Numbered from the stretch's first letter, positions 18,177 to 25,271 are shown. The stretch is 64,000 bases of DNA from Hyaloraphidium curvatum SAG 235-1 (GCA_025558095.1 JAIVFI010000044.1:124001-188000); one strand, 5' to 3'. The notes: generated by a model from the letters alone, not told the origin. Numbers and translations: made by a program.

Positions 18177-20864
18177 ATGGTGACAACGCGCCGACGGGCC
18201 GCGCAGGACGCCGCCGGCGACGGCGACGTGGCGAATTCATCTGCCGCTGCTGCCCCCAATGGCGGCGGCGTCCGGCCCGCGAACGGCGCCGCCGCGCACG
18301 CAAACGGCTCCGCGGGCGCGGCCGCCGCACATTCTCCCGCACGGCCGCCCGGCTTCTTTTCCATGCTCGTGACGCTGGCGCGCCTGAAAATGGCCGTGTT
18401 CTCCGCCGTCACCTACTCGACCGCGTTCACGCTCGGGCTGCGCTTGGCGCGCGAACGGAGCGACGCGGCCGTCCCGTTCTCTCTCTCCGCCTTCTTCTCT
18501 GGCTGGCTGTTCATGTTTCTGTGCCAAATGTCGGCCCACCTGCTGGGCGAGTACTACGATCTCGCGTCGGACTCGCTGAACCAGGGAGGGCCGTTCACGG
18601 GAGGCAGCAAAGTCCTGGTCAAGGGCGGGAGCGATCCCGGAGTCGCGCTGGTTGGGGGCTGGCTGTCTACTCTGGCTGCAGTACTCGTCATGGGTACGTG
18701 TTGATCTGCCTTCGGGCACGGAAGCGAAGGAATCAGCTGACGGGCCGACCTGCAGTGACTCTGATACCTCACGACCTCTTCCTCTTCACCATCCCGATGC
18801 TCCTTATCGCACATCAATATTCCGCACCGCCGCTCAAGCTGAACCACCGCGGATTGGGGGAACTCGCTGCCTCAAAGGCCATGAACATCCTGACTCCCCT
18901 CTTTGCCATGCGCATGGCGTATCCGGGGCTACGAAGCCCCACCGCCGCGGCTGCGACAGCCATGGCGGACGGGATGGCGCGCCTCCTCATCGTGCCGCCC
19001 TTCCTGAACAAGGTCGCCATGCTGCTCATGCTAAACATCGCCGACCGCCTTCCCGATTGGGCCGCAGGCAAGGAAACGCTCGCGGTCAAGCTCGGCGACG
19101 CGCTTTCCGTGCGCCTCCACCTGGCGCTCATGGGACTCTCGATGCTCTCGGTGCTCTTCTGCCTGGACACCGGCCATTTCTCGTTCGTGCCGTTCCCGCC
19201 AAAGACCGGGGCTCCCGTTCTGGCCGCCATTGCCGTCCTAGCCGGCATACTACCCGGACTTGGAATCTCTCTCGACTCGGCCAGCTACCTCCCCGATCCG
19301 TCGCACCATGCCGCGACCACAAAGTGGCGGCCCGAGGTGGTCCGCACCGTCAAGCAGGCGCCGTACCCCGTTCTGGCCATCCTCTTTACCATGCTCGCCG
19401 AGGAGCTCGCCTTCCGCGGCCCGTCGATGCTCCTTTCCCCGGACCTGCACTTCCGCCTGCTCCCGCTCTACGTCTTCGCCTACAACATCCTCTCCGCACC
19501 GCGGCCTCCCCCTGCCAAACCCCAGGAATTCGCCTGGACCCCCCCGACCGAGCCCATCCTCATCGCCGGCGCCGGCCCCTCGGGCCTAGGCCTGTACAAC
19601 GCCCTGACCGCCCTCGGCTTCAGCTGCCGCCTCTTCGACCGCCGCTCCCGCGCGGACCTCAACACGGGTGCCGACGTCGGCCTCTGGCCCGGCGCCATCC
19701 GCGTGCTCGCCGCGTACGGCGTCGGCGGCGGGGGGTGGTGGGACCGCGAGACGTGGCCCGTGGCCACGGTGCGGATGGCCAATGCTCGTGGGAGGGTTTT
19801 CAAAGCCGTAGACATGGACGCGGTGAACCCGCCCGATGCGGGGGCGCCGGGCGGCGGGAGGTTCAGGCTGATCGGGAGGCAGCCGCTGATGGATGCCATG
19901 GTGGAGATGGTGGGGGAGGACAACATCGAGTTTGGGAGGGAGGTGCTGCGGTACGAGGCCGACGAGGGAGGCGTCACGGTCGAGGTGTCCCGCCCGGACG
20001 GGTCCGTCGAGACGGTCCGCGGGTTCATGCTCGTCGGCGCGGACGGCATCGGCTCGACGGTGCGCAAGCAGCTCCGCGGCAAGGCCGAGCGGCCGCGGTA
20101 CGCGGGCGAGGTGTGCCACCGCGGGGTGCTGGACATGTCGTCCGTGCCCAAATCGCTTGCCGGGCTGCTCGAAACCCCGCAGGGCGAGATGCGGCTGATC
20201 CATGGCGAGGGATGGAGGGGGAGCTACGGCCTCATGGCTCCAAAGCTCGGCTTCTGGTGGTTCAAGCACCCGCTGGCCGGCGAGCCCGCCCGTCCTACGG
20301 CCGAGGAGGCGGCAAAGTGGCCCGAGCCGTTCAACCAGCTGCTTGCCGGGACCCCGGACGGCGGGTACTGGGTCGAGCCCGTCCTCGATCGCGGCGACAG
20401 CTGGGCTTGGGGTGGCGAGAAGGGCAGGGTGATCTGCATCGGAGACGCAGCCCATCCAGTGACCCCCAACATGGCGCAAGGTATGCTCTCCGCATGCTTT
20501 TGGCGTTTTCTGCACTCACTTCCAAAACCCATTAGGCTGCACGACTTCGATCACCGATTCGCTATTGTTGGCCGTGCTTCTGCGGCGCCTCCTCCCGGTC
20601 CTCCCTCCGCCCCTCTCGCTCCTCGAAGCCCAGTACCAGCTCCACCTTCTGCGCGCCCCGCACGTGGGGGCCGTCGCCCGCACGTCGTACATGCAGGCGC
20701 GCATCGGGCAGTGGACCGGGCTTGCTGCGAAGTTCAGAGAATGGGCCATGAGCAAGGCGCCCCTGGAGAAAGGGCTGCGGGGCAACAGGGAAGAGCGGAC
20801 CGCCTCGTGGGTGGACGAATGGCTCGGTTACGCGGAAGAATGGGACCGCAAGACCGGAGCGTAG
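18177..20864 (+). CDS. Fusion of a UbiA/MenA-like prenyltransferase and an FAD-dependent monooxygenase
   Basis: Prenyltransferase motifs GEYYDLASDSLN, FTGGSKVL, YSAPPLKLNHRGLGE, NIADRLPDWAAGKETLAVKLG. Monooxygenase motifs ILIAGAGPSGL, LVGADGIGSTVR, IGDAAHPVTPNMAQG. Introns 18694-18755 and 20481-20535; the junction lies inside one exon. Confidence 0.85.
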
Positions 20865-20875
20865 AGCAATATAGA

Positions 20876-22069
20876 TCAGGACCTTCCTAAGCGCCCGAAG
20901 AAGCTGCTCGGGGTGCCTTCCACGTCCCTCGCCCTCTTGACAAAGGCGGTGAAGGAGCTCACGCAGTTCCCGACAAAGTGCGCGGCGTCGCTGGACGACA
21001 TGACGGCGAGCTCCACGAGCGGATCGGCGTCCGGCAGAGAAAGCAGCTCGATCGCGCGGGCCTTCAGCAGCGTTCGCAGGGCATCCACCGCATTCTTGTC
21101 GTCCGACGCAACGAAGGCAGCTTTTGCGCCGATCGGGGCCGCCACGTGGGCAATGTCGCGCGCCACGTCCTCGAGCGGCGGATAGCACATCTCCATCGTC
21201 ACGTTGCCCTCCCCCGGTGCGAGACACTGCGGGCTCGACATCCACTCGGGTCTTCCGACACCGACGCGGCACGCGCCGTCCCAGTCGCTCCCGTAGCGGA
21301 CGTGCGCCGCGATCCAGGGCCGCGGGAAGCCGGAAGTCGCCTGCTTTGCCTTGTCCGCGATCGCAGGCGCGAACGACAGGTAGCGTTGGAAGCGAATGTC
21401 CTCGGAAAGAACGGGAAACGGAACGGGAACCCCGGTAAAGACGAGGACGGGGTGCAGTTCCGCCGGAAACGCCCTCGCCCAGTCCTTGGCCCGGCCGCCG
21501 GAAACGAGAGCCTGCGGATACGCGGAGGAAGCCGGCGGCACGACCCCCGGTCCCAAAGCATGGCTCCAAAAGTCTTCCGCGGGTTGCCCCGTCCCGAAAG
21601 AGCACGTCCCTCCGCGGAGGAAAGGGCAGAGCGACAGAAAGCTCTCGAGGGGAAGTTTCCGGCTCCGAAACTCGCGCAGGGTAACGACGCGCCCGGCGTT
21701 CCTCAGCTTCTGCAGGTCAAATACGGTTTCCACGTCCGCGAACCGCCTGCCGGCCTCGTAGAAGATGAACGGGGGCACGACCAGCGTCCTATCCGCCCGC
21801 TTCGCGACGCCCAGCATCCCGAGCAGGTAGTCCGCCTGGTTCCCGAAGCGGCCCATGCACGGACAGTACATGATGTAGCCGGCTTCATTGTCGGGGTTGG
21901 ACGCGTTTAAGGGTTCTGCTGGAGCCCGAGTCGCGTCCACGTCCGTTCCGGCAGGCGAGGCAGGCGATGCGGAGCGTTCGTCGCCGCGCCCGAGGAACCA
22001 GGCGAGCACGGCCAAGAGAGCAGCGAGCAGCGATATCCGGAAGAACATTCGCGCTGACGAACTGAGCAT
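20876..22069 (-). CDS. POFUT1: GDP-fucose protein O-fucosyltransferase 1-like (GT65)
   Basis: GYIMYCPCMGRFGNQADY, RTLVVPP, HVRYGSDW..AC, MSSPQC, TMEMCYP, FVASD, HFVGNCVSSFTAFVKRARDVEGTPSSFFG. N-terminal signal/TM segment; single exon. Confidence 0.9.
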   Translation of the reverse strand: MLSSSARMFFRISLLAALLAVLAWFLGRGDERSASPASPAGTDVDATRAPAEPLNASNPDNEAGYIMYCPCMGRFGNQADYLLGMLGVAKRADRTLVVPPFIFYEAGRRFADVETVFDLQKLRNAGRVVTLREFRSRKLPLESFLSLCPFLRGGTCSFGTGQPAEDFWSHALGPGVVPPASSAYPQALVSGGRAKDWARAFPAELHPVLVFTGVPVPFPVLSEDIRFQRYLSFAPAIADKAKQATSGFPRPWIAAHVRYGSDWDGACRVGVGRPEWMSSPQCLAPGEGNVTMEMCYPPLEDVARDIAHVAAPIGAKAAFVASDDKNAVDALRTLLKARAIELLSLPDADPLVELAVMSSSDAAHFVGNCVSSFTAFVKRARDVEGTPSSFFGRLGRS

Positions 22070-22211
22070 GGAAGTCCGGCATTGGCCTTTCGCGTTCGCG
22101 GAGGGACGTGCGGCCCAGCTTCACTCGGGCGGACGCTGGACACGGAGGCATAAGTTCATTCGCATGAGCAATCAGCCTCAAATTGATTCCGAAACAGTTG
22201 GAGTAGCGGCG

Positions 22212-22954
22212 TCACTTGCCCTCTGCTGCCCGCTCCTTCCCTCCCCAGCTGCAGATTGAGGAAAGTCAGCGCACGCAACGAGATGCCGCGAACATCGAGA
22301 CACGTACTAGGTGTAGTTCAGATACCGGTATCCCTGAGTGAGTTGCAGGGCCTGAGGTGGAGGATTCGTTAGCCCGGGCGGAGAAGCGAAGCCGTGGCGG
22401 CTCCGAAGACTCTGGTCCGTCCCGGCCCATGGAACGGCCTTCCCCCAACGATTCCCGTCCAGATACAGAAGTCGGCACCGCTCTCCAAAGATTCCATCGC
22501 GAGGCTCCCCAAGACCACCTCCGCACCCCCCGAAACGCACCTCGTTCGTCGCGTGGCACGCAAACAGCAGCATGTTCCTCGGCTGCACCCTCCACGCGAA
22601 CCGCATGAACAGGATCGAGTAGACCACCATCGCCCCCGTCATGTTGGGCGAGATGATTTCCGGGGATTTGGAGAGGTCGTGGTAGGCCGCGAAGGGGAGG
22701 CCCCAGTTGGCCACGGGGCCCCAGAAGTGCGTGCTGCGGGACCACGGCAAGACACGGACGGTCGGTAATCGCGATCGACGGGCGAGGGAACGCAAGGTCG
22801 GGGACGATGCGGGTCAGAAGAGGGAACAGGGGAGGGAGACGCGTGCCCACCTCATGAAGTACTTCTGCGCCTCCTGGTTCGTCTTGAACCCGAACGTCCG
22901 CAGGAAGGAGTTGGCCGTGGCGGTGGCCGCCGCCGATGTCGCCGGCCCGCTCAT
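22212..22954 (-). CDS. MPC1: Mitochondrial pyruvate carrier subunit 1
   Basis: [60 protein letters not shown]. Three introns; ends [12 protein letters not shown]. Confidence 0.93.
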
Positions 22955-23094
22955 CCTCGAGCGCTGTCTACACGGGGGCAAGTTGAGGAGGGTGCGAATT
23001 CCCTTTGGCAGTCGACACTTAACTGACTCAAGTTTCGCTTCGGTGTTCGTTTGCTGGACCATTCCTGGTCCTCCGAGGTGCTCATTCGCTCCCG

Positions 23095-25271
23095 ATGGAT
23101 CTCCGAAACCGGAAACCCGGGTCCACGGAGCCCCACGACACCGCGGACCCGCCCTCCAGCGGCCCATCCAACGGACATGCCGCACACGGCAACGGACCCT
23201 CCGGCGGCGGAATGAAAACCGACAATGCCGCCGCTCGGAGCCCGAAGAAACAGGAATCGCGCCGCGGTGTTTCCCTCTGGCTGCTGTCTCTGGTCCCGCT
23301 CGCCGCCGCCCTAGCTCTGCCCCTGCTGAGGCCGGACCTGCTGCCGCCCGACTTTGCCGATTCGCTGGAAGATTTCCGCGCGGAGCTCGCCGACCGCGTT
23401 GCTTTCGGCTCTTACCACCACCTCGCGGTGCGCGACGCCGATTCCAGCTTCCCGACGTTCACCGATGCGGACTACGATGCCCCCGCCGCGGACCCGGGCC
23501 CGGACTGGATGCTGCGGTTGCGGTGGCGCCTTTCGGAGCGGGTGCGCGGGGAGGGCGATCCGGCCGACGATGCCCTGCTCGGCAACGCGCTCGTGGACGG
23601 GAGGTGGGACCTGCCGCGCCCCTCTCCTTTCCGGCACGCTCATCCGCCCCGCTCCGCAGCCTCCCGGACCCGGAGACGGACCCCGAGACGGACCCCCTCG
23701 CACTCCTCCGGCTGCACGCGCGGTTCTCCATGGACCGCGCGCTCTCCACCACGCGGATCCCCATCTCCTCGATCTCCCCCTGGGCCAAGGCGCTGCTGTC
23801 CCGGGACGGGACCGCGCTCCCCCGTGCGCTGCACCGCCTGCTCGCCGACGACGATGCGGAGGGGGAGGGGGTGCCGGCGGGGGACACGGTGGCGGTGTGG
23901 CGGCTCCGGTCGCACGCCAACCGGCTGTTTCTCAGGCTGCTGATGCGGGTCTGCCTCGCCACGGAGGAGCGGCTGGAAGCTTGCCGCAGGCGCGCGGGGG
24001 CGAAGGACGAGTTCGGGATGGACCTCGCGCTGCGGCTGTGGTCGGACGGCAACCTCGCCGGTGCGCGGTGGGCCGCGTCGGCGCTGGGCGCGCGCGCGGG
24101 GAGGGACGGGTGGGGCAGGGGCCCGCGGAACCTCACGTATGCGCGGTTCGTCGAGAATTCGCGGAAATGGGCCGCCGAGGGCTCCGATTGCGAGGTGCCC
24201 GTCGTGAAGATAACCTCGCTGCACGACCGCGCGGGGTTCGCCGAGGTGCGGAGGCTGATGGAGGAGAACGAGCCCGTGCTGATGAGGGGGGTGGGGTACC
24301 ACCTCCTGGGCGGGCCGAGGGTGCTGGGGACCGACGTGGGGAAGCTCGTGGAGAAGGTGGAGAAGGCGATGCGTGCCGAGGCTGCGGGGGAGAGCGTCGA
24401 GGAGGAGGAGGAGGAGCAGGATGAGGATGAGGAGGACGAGGAGAGGGAAGAGAGGGAGCGGTTGCGGGAGCTGGAGAACTGGGACAAGCGCGGCCCGGGG
24501 AGCGCGGGCAAGGAGGCCAAGCCGCCCGGCGTGGCGGTGGGCAGCGTGCCCTACGCCGGGTACTTTGCGCTGCCCACGCGGCGGATGGGCCTCTTGGAGT
24601 ACTACCGGCGGCACGTGGCGGCCGAGGGCACCGTGCCCGAAGCCGGGGACGGGGTGCCGTACGTGTTCGAGAAGAACCCCCGCGTGACGCGGGACGGGCT
24701 GTCGATGGTGTCGCAGATCCTGGAGCTGGTGTTTTACCGCGAGGACAGGGAGCGTGACGGGATGGTCTGTCCGGTGGCGGGTGGTAGGAACGGCGCGGGG
24801 GAGAGCGTGCATTTTTACCTGGGGAGGAAGGGGTCGGGTGCGCCGACGCACATCCATGCGGATGCGATCAATTTTCTCGTCAAGGGGTGGAAGCGGTGGT
24901 TCGTGGTGGGTGGATCCGGTGCAGGAGGCGGGCTTCCGACCGTTGCCTGACGCGCACCTGTTCAGCATCCGCCCCTGCAATCCCTCTATTCGCGCACGCC
25001 GGTGCCCTTCTACCCCTCGCTCCTGTCGGAGCACTACCCCACGCACCCCAAGCCCCTCGAGTGCGTGCAGAAGCCCGGCGACGCCTTCTTCGTCCCCTTC
25101 GACTGGGGCCACGGCGTGCTGAACGAGGCCGACGAGGTCGAGGCCAGGCTGAACCCCAAGAATGCGGGGACCAACTTCGGGTACGCGGTGGAGCTGGTCA
25201 ACAGGCGGTCGGTCGGGGCATTGCCCGTGCCCGGGGGGAAGAAGGGCAGGGGCGGGTGGGGGTGCGAGTGA
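23095..25271 (+). CDS. Membrane-anchored JmjC/cupin protein (JMJD8-like HxH..H)
   Basis: N-terminal TM, FYLGRKGSGAPTHIHADAIN..GWKRWF, PLECVQKPGDAFFVPFDWGHGVLN. Introns at about 23604-23659 and 24907-24966. Confidence 0.8.

What the first reader, a model, noticed from the sequence alone, without database searches (positions are those of the whole stretch)
20876..22069. Animal-like POFUT1 (Notch/EGF O-fucosyltransferase) in a fungal genome
Seen: near-verbatim POFUT1 motifs (YCPCMGRFGNQAD; HVRxGSDW; MSSPQC; HFVGNCVSSFTAFVKRxRD..G.PSSFFG), including the catalytic Asn and Arg and the disulfide Cys pattern. Intronless, with no KDEL-like tail. Known: POFUT1 modifies folded EGF repeats and is regarded as mainly metazoan. 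Inference: ancient opisthokont retention or horizontal transfer, implying protein O-fucosylation of unknown fungal substrates.
Basis: partly seen in the sequence, partly recalled or inferred. Interest (0 to 1): 0.8.

Follow-up and report, generated by a model that had tools for sequence, protein, structure and literature searches.

The report
True POFUT1 enzyme in a fungus
The early-diverging freshwater fungus Hyaloraphidium curvatum has an intact, transcribed copy of POFUT1, the enzyme that adds fucose to EGF repeats in animals. The same genome also encodes EGF repeats carrying the matching fucose site and the genes that make GDP-fucose, so this protein modification is probably not confined to animals and their closest relatives.

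Summary
Window 20876-22069 (minus strand) is an uninterrupted 397-codon ORF. It matches Pfam O-FucT (E 2.7e-39) and the solved human, mouse and C. elegans POFUT1 structures (E 7e-60 to 4e-53, residues 62-392). No POFUT2 structure was matched.

The essential Asn (N77) and Arg (R258), the C-terminal GDP-fucose motif and all eight POFUT1 cysteines are kept. The protein has an N-terminal hydrophobic anchor and no KDEL-like tail.

The genome is Hyaloraphidium curvatum (Monoblepharidomycetes). NCBI already names the protein, but its model splices off the conserved C-terminus. Spliced RNA contigs run unspliced across the whole ORF and link it to both neighbouring genes.

The genome also has:
- at least 16 EGF modules, nearly all with C2-X4-S/T-C3 (mostly C-x-N-G-G-T-C);
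- two GDP-mannose dehydratase genes;
- two GDP-fucose synthase genes;
- a POGLUT1-like gene.

In trees the gene falls outside animals and choanoflagellates. It sits with two unnamed environmental sequences and a Paulinella protein. That excludes contamination and recent transfer from an animal. Ancient vertical retention and old transfer between protists remain unresolved.

It is a new member of a known family. Two other first-stage notes in this scan flagged EGF repeats with the O-fucose site elsewhere in this genome.

The parts
20876..22069 (-). Complete POFUT1 (GT65) coding sequence, 397 codons plus stop, with no intron. Met8 (22046-22048) is the start used by the NCBI model.
   Evidence: ORF; PF10250 at 136 bits; POFUT1 structures at E 7e-60; RNA contig collinear from 20534 to 22248.
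21992..22048 (-). N-terminal hydrophobic segment, residues 8-26: a signal anchor or signal peptide. It is followed by a Pro/Ser/Ala/Asp-rich stem-like stretch (about residues 27-62, not aligned to the POFUT1 structures).
   Evidence: It is the highest 19-residue Kyte-Doolittle window, 2.25 at residue 8. The topology is inferred.
21830..21868 (-). YCPCMGRFGNQAD motif (residues 68-80). It holds the first Cys pair (C69, C71) and Asn77, the counterpart of the essential Asn43 (C. elegans) / Asn51 (mouse).
   Evidence: Alignments; the role of this Asn is from PMC8631701.
21281..21304 (-). HVRYGSDW motif (residues 256-263). It holds Arg258, the counterpart of the essential Arg240 (C. elegans, Drosophila) / Arg245 (mouse).
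   Evidence: Alignments, where R258 is an invariant column; the role of this Arg is from PMC8631701.
20894..20980 (-). C-terminal motif HFVGNCVSSFTAFVKRARD..PSSFFG (residues 364-392), the most conserved block of POFUT1. The NCBI gene model removes it.
   Evidence: the RNA contig is unspliced here.
22249..22961 (-). Upstream gene on the same strand, resembling the mitochondrial pyruvate carrier. It has three introns (22249-22307, 22351-22539, 22734-22850) and sits on the same RNA contig as POFUT1. Context only.
   Evidence: Minus-strand GT..AG joints; translations. The family name rests on my recognition of the sequence and was not tested.
19500..20864 (+). 3' part of the convergent prenyltransferase-monooxygenase gene, with an intron at 20479-20533. 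Its stop lies about 11 bases from the POFUT1 stop, so the two 3' ends must overlap. Context only.

Best explanation
This is a working, host-adapted gene for a protein O-fucosyltransferase 1 (CAZy GT65) in the fungus Hyaloraphidium curvatum. The protein enters the secretory pathway through an N-terminal hydrophobic segment. Because it has no KDEL-type tail, it is probably held in the ER or Golgi as a type II membrane protein rather than as a soluble ER resident like the animal enzyme. [quoted passage not shown] It would transfer the fucose to the Ser/Thr just before the third cysteine of folded EGF repeats (C2-X4-S/T-C3), using the conserved Asn77/Arg258 active site. The likely acceptors are the secreted, partly mucin-like EGF proteins encoded across this genome. 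Shown here: family identity, conserved catalytic and structural residues, transcription without splicing, linkage to host genes, and presence of donor-pathway and acceptor-type genes. Inferred: enzyme activity, topology, and which proteins are modified. On origin, the gene belongs to a non-holozoan branch of the POFUT1 tree. It is therefore old in this lineage or came from another microbial eukaryote, not from an animal.
For: Family: PF10250 at 136 bits. Only POFUT1 chains are matched in the PDB, at E 7e-60 to 4e-53 over residues 62-392. An exhaustive phmmer search gave 553 relatives, 67 of them at E<=1e-30.

Residues: N77, R258, the GNCVSSFTAF block and eight Cys aligned with the eight POFUT1 Cys. 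Asn and Arg are essential according to PMC8631701.

Expression and linkage: run X1 contigs carry GT..AG joints, so they derive from RNA. One 4111-base contig covers the ORF unspliced and continues into both neighbouring genes. Contigs from a DNA run of another study match without substitutions, apart from two single-base indels in low-depth contigs.

Host-like composition: GC3 is 0.80 against 0.78 for the neighbouring gene.

Acceptors: 11 PF00008 matches over the cut-off on many contigs. The C-x-N-G-G-[ST]-C DNA pattern is found 16 times against 6 for the control. Nearly all modules carry C2-X4-[ST]-C3, and several of the ORFs begin with signal-peptide-like segments.

Donor: two GDP-mannose dehydratase genes match TIGR01472 exon by exon at 173-219 bits. 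A GDP-fucose synthase gene matches human 4e5y at E 2.8e-112, and a second copy at 1.5e-54.

Tree: Hyaloraphidium+P0119+P0120 has support 100/96. Adding Paulinella gives 96/93. Metazoa form a separate clade at 96/90.

Docking: enzyme with one of the genome's own EGF modules scored 0.54 against a best control of 0.01, which the tool rates weak support.
Against: No activity, localisation or glycopeptide data exist. The KDEL-like tail that keeps animal POFUT1 in the ER, where it meets folding EGF repeats, is missing. The N-terminal segment could be a cleaved signal peptide, in which case the enzyme might be secreted. The complex prediction is only weak support and may reflect memory of solved POFUT1-EGF complexes. 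Expression of the EGF genes was not checked. No GDP-fucose transporter was searched for. Contigs cannot exclude a minor spliced isoform like the NCBI model.
Confidence: 0.8

Rival explanations
1. It is a true POFUT1 homologue, but in this fungus it acts on something other than EGF repeats, or works mainly as a folding chaperone. Under this view the EGF consensus sites are coincidental.
For: There is no KDEL-like tail, so its compartment may differ from that of the animal enzyme. A survey of fungal O-FucT proteins proposed altered substrates for the fungal subfamilies (PMC10481521). The docking support is only weak.
Against: The catalytic and acceptor-side motifs are conserved as in animal enzymes. 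Nearly every EGF module found carries the C2-X4-[ST]-C3 site, mostly in the canonical N-G-G-T form. That pattern is hard to explain without selection by a POFUT1-type enzyme. This gene is not one of the divergent fungal subfamilies: the other PF10250 matches in this genome score only 25-34 bits.
Confidence: 0.12
2. The gene is animal contamination of the assembly, or a recent transfer from an animal.
For: All named database hits other than the gene itself are animals, apart from a few choanoflagellates and Paulinella.
Against: Identity to any animal protein is only 30-39%. In the tree Metazoa form a clade (96/90) that excludes it. GC3 matches the neighbouring gene. RNA and DNA contigs from separate studies of the same organism join it to intron-bearing flanking genes. 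It lies inside a 255-kb contig.
Confidence: 0.02
3. It is an inactive relic: a pseudo-enzyme, or a gene that is decaying.
For: It appears to be isolated among named fungi, which could mean a gene on its way to loss.
Against: The reading frame is intact. All residues known to be essential and all eight Cys are kept. It is transcribed. The fold is confident, with pLDDT 88-90 for this chain without an alignment. Two environmental relatives keep the same motifs.
Confidence: 0.04

Closest known systems
Animal POFUT1 / Drosophila O-fut1 (CAZy GT65; structures 5ux6, 5kxh, 3zy2)
   Same: The domain is the same over its whole length, at 33-39% identity. The GRFGNQ Asn, the HxRxGxDW Arg, the GNCVSSFTAF block and all eight Cys are kept. 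EGF repeats with C2-X4-S/T-C3 and the GDP-fucose pathway are present in the same genome.
   Different: There is no C-terminal KDEL-like signal. A longer Pro/Ser-rich stem-like stretch follows the N-terminal hydrophobic segment, which suggests a type II anchor. The gene has no introns. It branches outside Holozoa. No Notch or DSL ligand context is expected; the candidate acceptors are small secreted and mucin-like EGF proteins.
Choanoflagellate POFUT1 (Salpingoeca helianthica, Choanoeca flexa, Codosiga hollandica, Stephanoeca diplocostata; EukProt)
   Same: They are single-celled, non-animal carriers of the same enzyme, at 32-39% identity.
   Different: They form their own clade (92/90), separate from the Hyaloraphidium group. 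Their presence fits the published 'holozoan-specific' view (PMC2770060); the fungal gene does not.
Unnamed sequences P0119 (lake or other metagenome, 46% identical) and P0120 (79-kb contig from run SRR26194948, 38%), plus the Paulinella micropora protein P0149
   Same: They are the nearest relatives and share a clade with the fungal gene (100/96, and 96/93 with Paulinella). P0119 and P0120 also lack a KDEL-like tail.
   Different: The source organisms of P0119 and P0120 are unknown, and their contigs have 53-54% GC against 66% here. The Paulinella protein ends in an HEEL-like tail.
Fungal O-FucT (PF10250) subfamilies A-G of Orlowska et al. 2023 (PMC10481521), and POFUT2 (GT68)
   Same: They share the Pfam clan and the GT-B fucosyltransferase chemistry.
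   Different: Those families are divergent and were described against POFUT2 residues. This genome's own copies score only 25-34 bits on PF10250, against 129-136 for this gene. No POFUT2 structure is matched at E<=0.001.

Membership tests
POFUT1 / CAZy GT65 | O-FucT domain (PF10250) above the curated cut-off, spanning the catalytic region | tested here: met
   136.1 bits against a cut-off of 31.5.
POFUT1 / CAZy GT65 | Closest solved relatives are POFUT1, not POFUT2 or other fucosyltransferases | tested here: met
   Only four distinct PDB sequences are matched, all POFUT1 (human, mouse, C. elegans), at E 7e-60 to 4e-53 over residues 62-392.
POFUT1 / CAZy GT65 | Essential active-site Asn (Ce Asn43 / Mm Asn51) and Arg (Ce Arg240 / Mm Arg245) | tested here: met
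   N77 in GRFGNQ and R258 in HVRYGSDW align with them. Their roles are from PMC8631701.
POFUT1 / CAZy GT65 | C-terminal nucleotide-sugar motif GNCVSSFTAF..R.RD | tested here: met
   Residues 364-392 are nearly identical to the human sequence. The NCBI model lacks this block, but RNA supports the unspliced ORF.
POFUT1 / CAZy GT65 | Eight conserved cysteines (four disulfides) | tested here: met
   The ORF has exactly eight Cys (69, 71, 148, 156, 267, 282, 295, 369), each aligned with a conserved Cys column. The pairing is inferred from the solved structures.
POFUT1 / CAZy GT65 | Soluble ER-resident protein with a C-terminal KDEL-like retrieval signal (the animal form) | tested here: not met
   The protein ends in RLGRS, and its nearest relatives end in FFGD and FFGKVFG. 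This is a feature of the animal proteins, not of the catalytic family.
POFUT1 / CAZy GT65 | Branches within the POFUT1 tree | tested here: met
   Trees of 88 and 30 sequences place it in a well-supported clade beside the choanoflagellate and animal POFUT1 clades. The trees are unrooted.
POFUT1 / CAZy GT65 | Acceptors available: six-Cys EGF repeats with C2-X4-S/T-C3 | tested here: met
   PF00008 matches, a pattern count of 16 against 6 for the control, and module sequences.
POFUT1 / CAZy GT65 | Donor available: de novo GDP-fucose synthesis | tested here: met
   Two GDP-mannose dehydratase genes and two GDP-fucose synthase genes. A Golgi/ER GDP-fucose transporter was not searched for.
POFUT1 / CAZy GT65 | Binds a folded EGF module at the active-site face | tested here: inconclusive
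   Complex prediction scored 0.54 against a best control of 0.01 and was rated weak support. It may reflect memory of solved complexes.
POFUT1 / CAZy GT65 | Transfers fucose from GDP-fucose to EGF Ser/Thr | not testable with these tools
   This needs an enzyme assay or glycoproteomics.
POFUT2 / CAZy GT68 | Significant similarity to POFUT2 and use of a catalytic Glu | tested here: not met
   No POFUT2 chain is matched at E<=0.001. The active-site position holds the POFUT1-type Asn.

The most novel reading that the evidence does not exclude
EGF-repeat O-fucosylation, perhaps together with O-glucosylation, is not a holozoan invention. On this reading it was already present in the common ancestor of fungi and animals, or earlier given the Paulinella relative. 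It was then lost in almost all fungi and survives in Hyaloraphidium as a complete set: POFUT1, a POGLUT1-like GT90, GDP-fucose synthesis, and secreted EGF proteins whose repeats nearly all keep the C-x-N-G-G-T-C and C-x-S-x-P-C sites.
Probability: 0.35. Interest if true: 0.7.

Novelty: new member of a known kind. Interest (0 to 1): 0.55.

Why it matters
POFUT1 is known as the enzyme without which Notch cannot signal, and it has been listed as specific to holozoans (PMC2770060). The main survey of fungal fucosylation described only divergent O-FucT subfamilies and assumed that fungi lack EGF motifs (PMC10481521).

A fungus with an orthodox POFUT1, many EGF repeats keeping the exact acceptor site, and the donor pathway shows that the enzyme and acceptor module exist outside Holozoa. 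It also offers a simple Notch-free organism for asking what O-fucose on EGF repeats does in itself: folding quality control, secretion or adhesion. Either the module's origin moves back in time, or it documents gene transfer between microbial eukaryotes.

There is also a practical point. The public gene model removes the most conserved C-terminal block and should be corrected.

Tried and rejected
- **Finding other fungi.** I used three word-index protein searches: with the ORF, with a profile of the three-member clade, and with a profile of the non-holozoan group. None returned another named fungus. Each scored only the 8000 candidates sharing most words, and P0119 did not reappear although it was in the query alignments. 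Absence is therefore only moderately supported.
- **Exhaustive search.** It has no names, and I could name only about 30 of its hits.
- **Organism behind P0120.** Pfam on its neighbouring called genes gave nothing diagnostic, and the ribosomal S17e gene lies beyond the fetched flank.
- **Rooting the tree.** I dropped this because the only available outgroup, this genome's own distant O-FucT paralogue, would give an unreliable long branch.
- **O-FucT paralogue next to a fucose gene.** The idea that the O-FucT-like gene on contig 6 sits next to a fucose-pathway gene is rejected. Its neighbour is UDP-glucose 4-epimerase.
- **POFUT1 head-to-head with the JmjC-like gene.** This is rejected. RNA joints show a pyruvate-carrier-like gene on the same strand between them. 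Pfam found no domain in the 22707-24950 or 23095-23943 frames.
- **Fringe.** Only weak partial matches (23-41 bits, model positions about 86-168), so no true Fringe can be claimed.
- **Literature.** Searches for POFUT1/GT65 in Hyaloraphidium or chytrids found nothing specific. One paper lists GT65 in Ganoderma boninense from automated CAZy typing; I did not check that protein, and none from that species appeared among the listed hits.

Full report
**1. The observation**

The window has about 66% G+C throughout. On the minus strand, 20876-22069 is a single 397-codon ORF.
- YCPCMGRFGNQAD at residues 68-80;
- HVRYGSDW at 256-263;
- MSSPQC at 277-282;
- HFVGNCVSSFTAFVKRARDVEGTPSSFFG at 364-392.

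Pfam gives one family, O-FucT PF10250, at E 2.7e-39 and 136 bits against a cut-off of 31.5. A sequence search of all PDB chains returns only POFUT1. Human 5ux6 matches at E 7.2e-60, mouse 5kxh at 2.2e-59 and C. elegans 3zy2 at 4.3e-53. Each alignment runs from residue 62 or 63 to 392 and covers almost the whole crystallised chain. No POFUT2 (GT68) chain reaches E 0.001.

**2. Which organism, and is the gene really part of it?**

The best database hit is an NCBI protein named 'GDP-fucose protein O-fucosyltransferase [Hyaloraphidium curvatum]', on a 255-kb contig. Hyaloraphidium is a monoblepharid, an early-diverging fungus, so 'fungal genome' is right. The window is contig 44, positions 124001-188000, of a 31.9-Mb, 55-contig assembly.

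The NCBI model starts at Met8. It is identical up to Cys369 and then departs for its last nine residues. A predicted intron therefore removes the VSSFTAFVKR..PSSFFG block, the most conserved part of the family.

I laid public runs on 19500-25000. Run X1 is listed only as 'RNA?', but its contigs carry canonical GT..AG joints on the coding strand of each gene, so they come from spliced RNA. One 4111-base contig is collinear with the genome from 20534 to 22248, across the whole ORF with no joint. It continues on one side into the convergent plus-strand gene, whose intron at 20479-20533 is removed. On the other side it continues into a same-strand upstream gene, whose three introns (22249-22307, 22351-22539, 22734-22850) are removed.

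So the gene is transcribed, intronless, and physically linked to intron-bearing host genes. Contigs cannot exclude a rare spliced isoform.

Contigs from a run of another study of the same coded organism match without substitutions. The only differences are two single-base indels in low-depth contigs. GC3 of the ORF is 0.80, against 0.78 for the neighbouring gene. Contamination is not a tenable explanation.

**3. The protein**

An alignment with human-type, fly, nematode, choanoflagellate and Paulinella sequences, together with the pairwise alignments, shows three things:
- Asn77 sits in GRFGNQ and Arg258 in HVRYGSDW. They are the counterparts of Asn43/Asn51 and Arg240/Arg245, the two residues shown by mutagenesis to be essential (PMC8631701).
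- The ORF has exactly eight cysteines, each in a conserved Cys column. This matches the four disulfides of the solved enzymes; the pairing is inferred.
- ESMFold2, run without an alignment, folded residues 58-397 with pLDDT 88-90.

Two features differ from the animal enzymes. The protein ends in RLGRS, whereas the animal sequences end in EF or EL and Paulinella in an HEEL-like tail. And the only strongly hydrophobic stretch, residues 8-26, is followed by a Pro/Ser/Ala/Asp-rich stretch up to about residue 62, where similarity to the solved POFUT1 structures begins. That layout is typical of type II Golgi/ER glycosyltransferases (established knowledge; the topology here is inferred).

**4. Is the rest of the system there?**

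- *Acceptors.* PF00008 (EGF) gives 11 matches above its cut-off on nine contigs. A DNA pattern for C-x-N-G-G-[S/T]-C is found 16 times, against 6 for the reversed control, and 14 of the 16 have a real Ser/Thr codon. Reading the modules, all but one carry C2-X4-[ST]-C3, mostly as Q/L/S/N-N-G-G-T. At least six also carry C1-x-S-x-P-C2, the O-glucose consensus. Several of the ORFs begin with signal-peptide-like segments, and one is joined to a long Ser/Thr-rich mucin-like region.
- *Donor.* Two GDP-mannose 4,6-dehydratase genes match TIGR01472 exon by exon at 173-219 bits. One GDP-fucose synthase gene matches human TSTA3 at E 2.8e-112, and a second copy at 1.5e-54.
- *Other modifiers.* There is a GT90 gene similar to human POGLUT1 (E 6.5e-26). 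Fringe-family matches are only weak and partial.
- *Paralogues.* This is the only POFUT1-type gene. The other four PF10250 matches score 25-34 bits.

A complex prediction of the catalytic domain with one of the genome's own EGF modules gave a median score of 0.54 against a best control of 0.01, which the tool rates 'weak support'. In the tool's calibration the pass mark was reached by 51 of 78 solved complexes and 2 of 108 mismatched pairs. Scores of 0.60 or under came from only 5 of those 78 solved complexes and from all 4 mismatches that passed. The three runs agreed in at least 82% of their contacts, and the partner's pLDDT was at least 77. Because POFUT1-EGF complexes have been solved, this shows likeness more than it proves binding.

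**5. Relatives and origin**

The exhaustive phmmer search of 1.84 billion representatives found 553 relatives, 67 of them at E<=1e-30. The nearest are:
- P0119, 46% identical, on roughly 3.4-kb metagenome contigs with 53% GC;
- P0120, 38% identical, on a 79-kb contig assembled from run SRR26194948 with 54% GC.

Neither has a name. Other hits that I could name are animals, four choanoflagellates and Paulinella micropora, a rhizarian.

A careful maximum-likelihood tree of 30 sequences resolves three groups:
- Metazoa (support 96/90);
- choanoflagellates (92/90);
- a third clade (97/93), in which Hyaloraphidium+P0119+P0120 (100/96) joins Paulinella (96/93) and three environmental sequences.

The 88-sequence quick tree agrees. 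The gene is therefore not nested in animals or choanoflagellates.

The unrooted topology matches the species tree, so vertical descent from a pre-opisthokont ancestor with massive loss in fungi is possible. But only one named fungus and one named rhizarian carry the gene, so old transfer between microbial eukaryotes is at least as likely. I put these at roughly 45:50, with the remainder for other scenarios.

Three name-bearing searches found no other fungus. Their candidate lists are capped, so absence elsewhere in Fungi is only moderately supported.

**6. Comparison with what is known**

Gazave et al. 2009 list O-fut as specific to holozoans (PMC2770060). Orlowska et al. [quoted passage not shown] Hyaloraphidium is not in that paper (PMC10481521). 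I found no paper on POFUT1 in this or any other zoosporic fungus.

The automatic NCBI name shows that the family assignment itself is not new. Three things are new here: the corrected gene model, the matching EGF and GDP-fucose complement, and the placement outside Holozoa.

**7. Verdict**

It is a new member of a known family in an unexpected kingdom, with coherent supporting genes. Its evolutionary origin is unresolved and there is no biochemical proof. Interest is moderate to good.

Two other first-stage notes in this scan (s1-719294, s1-720605) flagged EGF repeats with the O-fucose site elsewhere in this genome. My own genome-wide search agrees with them.

Noticed in passing
window 20876-20965 (minus strand): The public NCBI model (371 aa) is identical to the ORF only up to Cys369 and then differs for nine residues. 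A predicted intron removes the conserved C-terminal motif, while the RNA contig is unspliced here.
   Followed up: yes
window 20534-22961: One transcriptome contig merges three genes: the convergent monooxygenase gene, POFUT1, and the upstream pyruvate-carrier-like gene. The two convergent stop codons are about 11 bases apart, so the 3' ends must overlap as natural antisense.
   Followed up: partly
window 22249-22961 (minus strand): A small gene resembling the mitochondrial pyruvate carrier, with three short introns (59, 189 and 117 bases), lies between POFUT1 and the JmjC-like gene noted earlier. Those two are therefore not head-to-head neighbours.
   Followed up: partly
window 22707-24950 (plus strand): Pfam finds no domain in either long frame of the gene noted earlier as a JmjC protein. 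RNA joints show introns at 23602-23657 and 24905-24964, so any JmjC domain would lie in other exons or be too divergent to detect.
   Followed up: partly
G000:C21:436941-437945 (L025): A GT90 gene similar to human POGLUT1 (E 6.5e-26). Several EGF modules in this genome carry the O-glucose consensus C-x-S-x-P-C, so a second EGF modification may exist. About 11 further GT90 matches are present.
   Followed up: partly
G000:C24:228142-229222; C18:323753-325062; C1:1314787-1315524; C5:903061-903918: There are two GDP-mannose 4,6-dehydratase genes and two GDP-fucose synthase genes. The contig 5 copy lies in an 872-residue open frame and may be a fusion.
   Followed up: partly
G000:C12:742528-745934 (L006/L007/L040): A gene with two EGF modules (both with the O-fucose site, one also with the O-glucose site) is joined to a long Ser/Thr-rich repetitive, mucin-like region. 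A separate family of small secreted proteins shares a 'YAYPDAPD..VACV.YP' module followed by one or two EGF repeats (contigs 4, 12 and 39).
   Followed up: partly
G000:C33:444971-448066 (L012): Four tandem EGF-like modules (C-x-T-N-N-G-G-C ... type), all with a Ser/Thr before the third Cys, sit in a 469-residue frame with Ig-like or adhesin-like flanks.
   Followed up: no
G000:C6:819626-822277 (L002/L029): A divergent O-FucT-like gene (PF10250, 34-40 bits) sits back to back with a UDP-glucose 4-epimerase gene.
   Followed up: partly
window 20309-20768: Two freshwater-metagenome runs from 2024 hold 151-base contigs with no or one difference from the window. This organism, or a very close strain, therefore occurs in those waters.
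   Followed up: no
P0149 (EukProt, Paulinella micropora): A rhizarian amoeba proteome contains a POFUT1 that groups with the fungal clade (96/93). It could be genuine or could come from prey or a contaminant in that data set.
   Followed up: no
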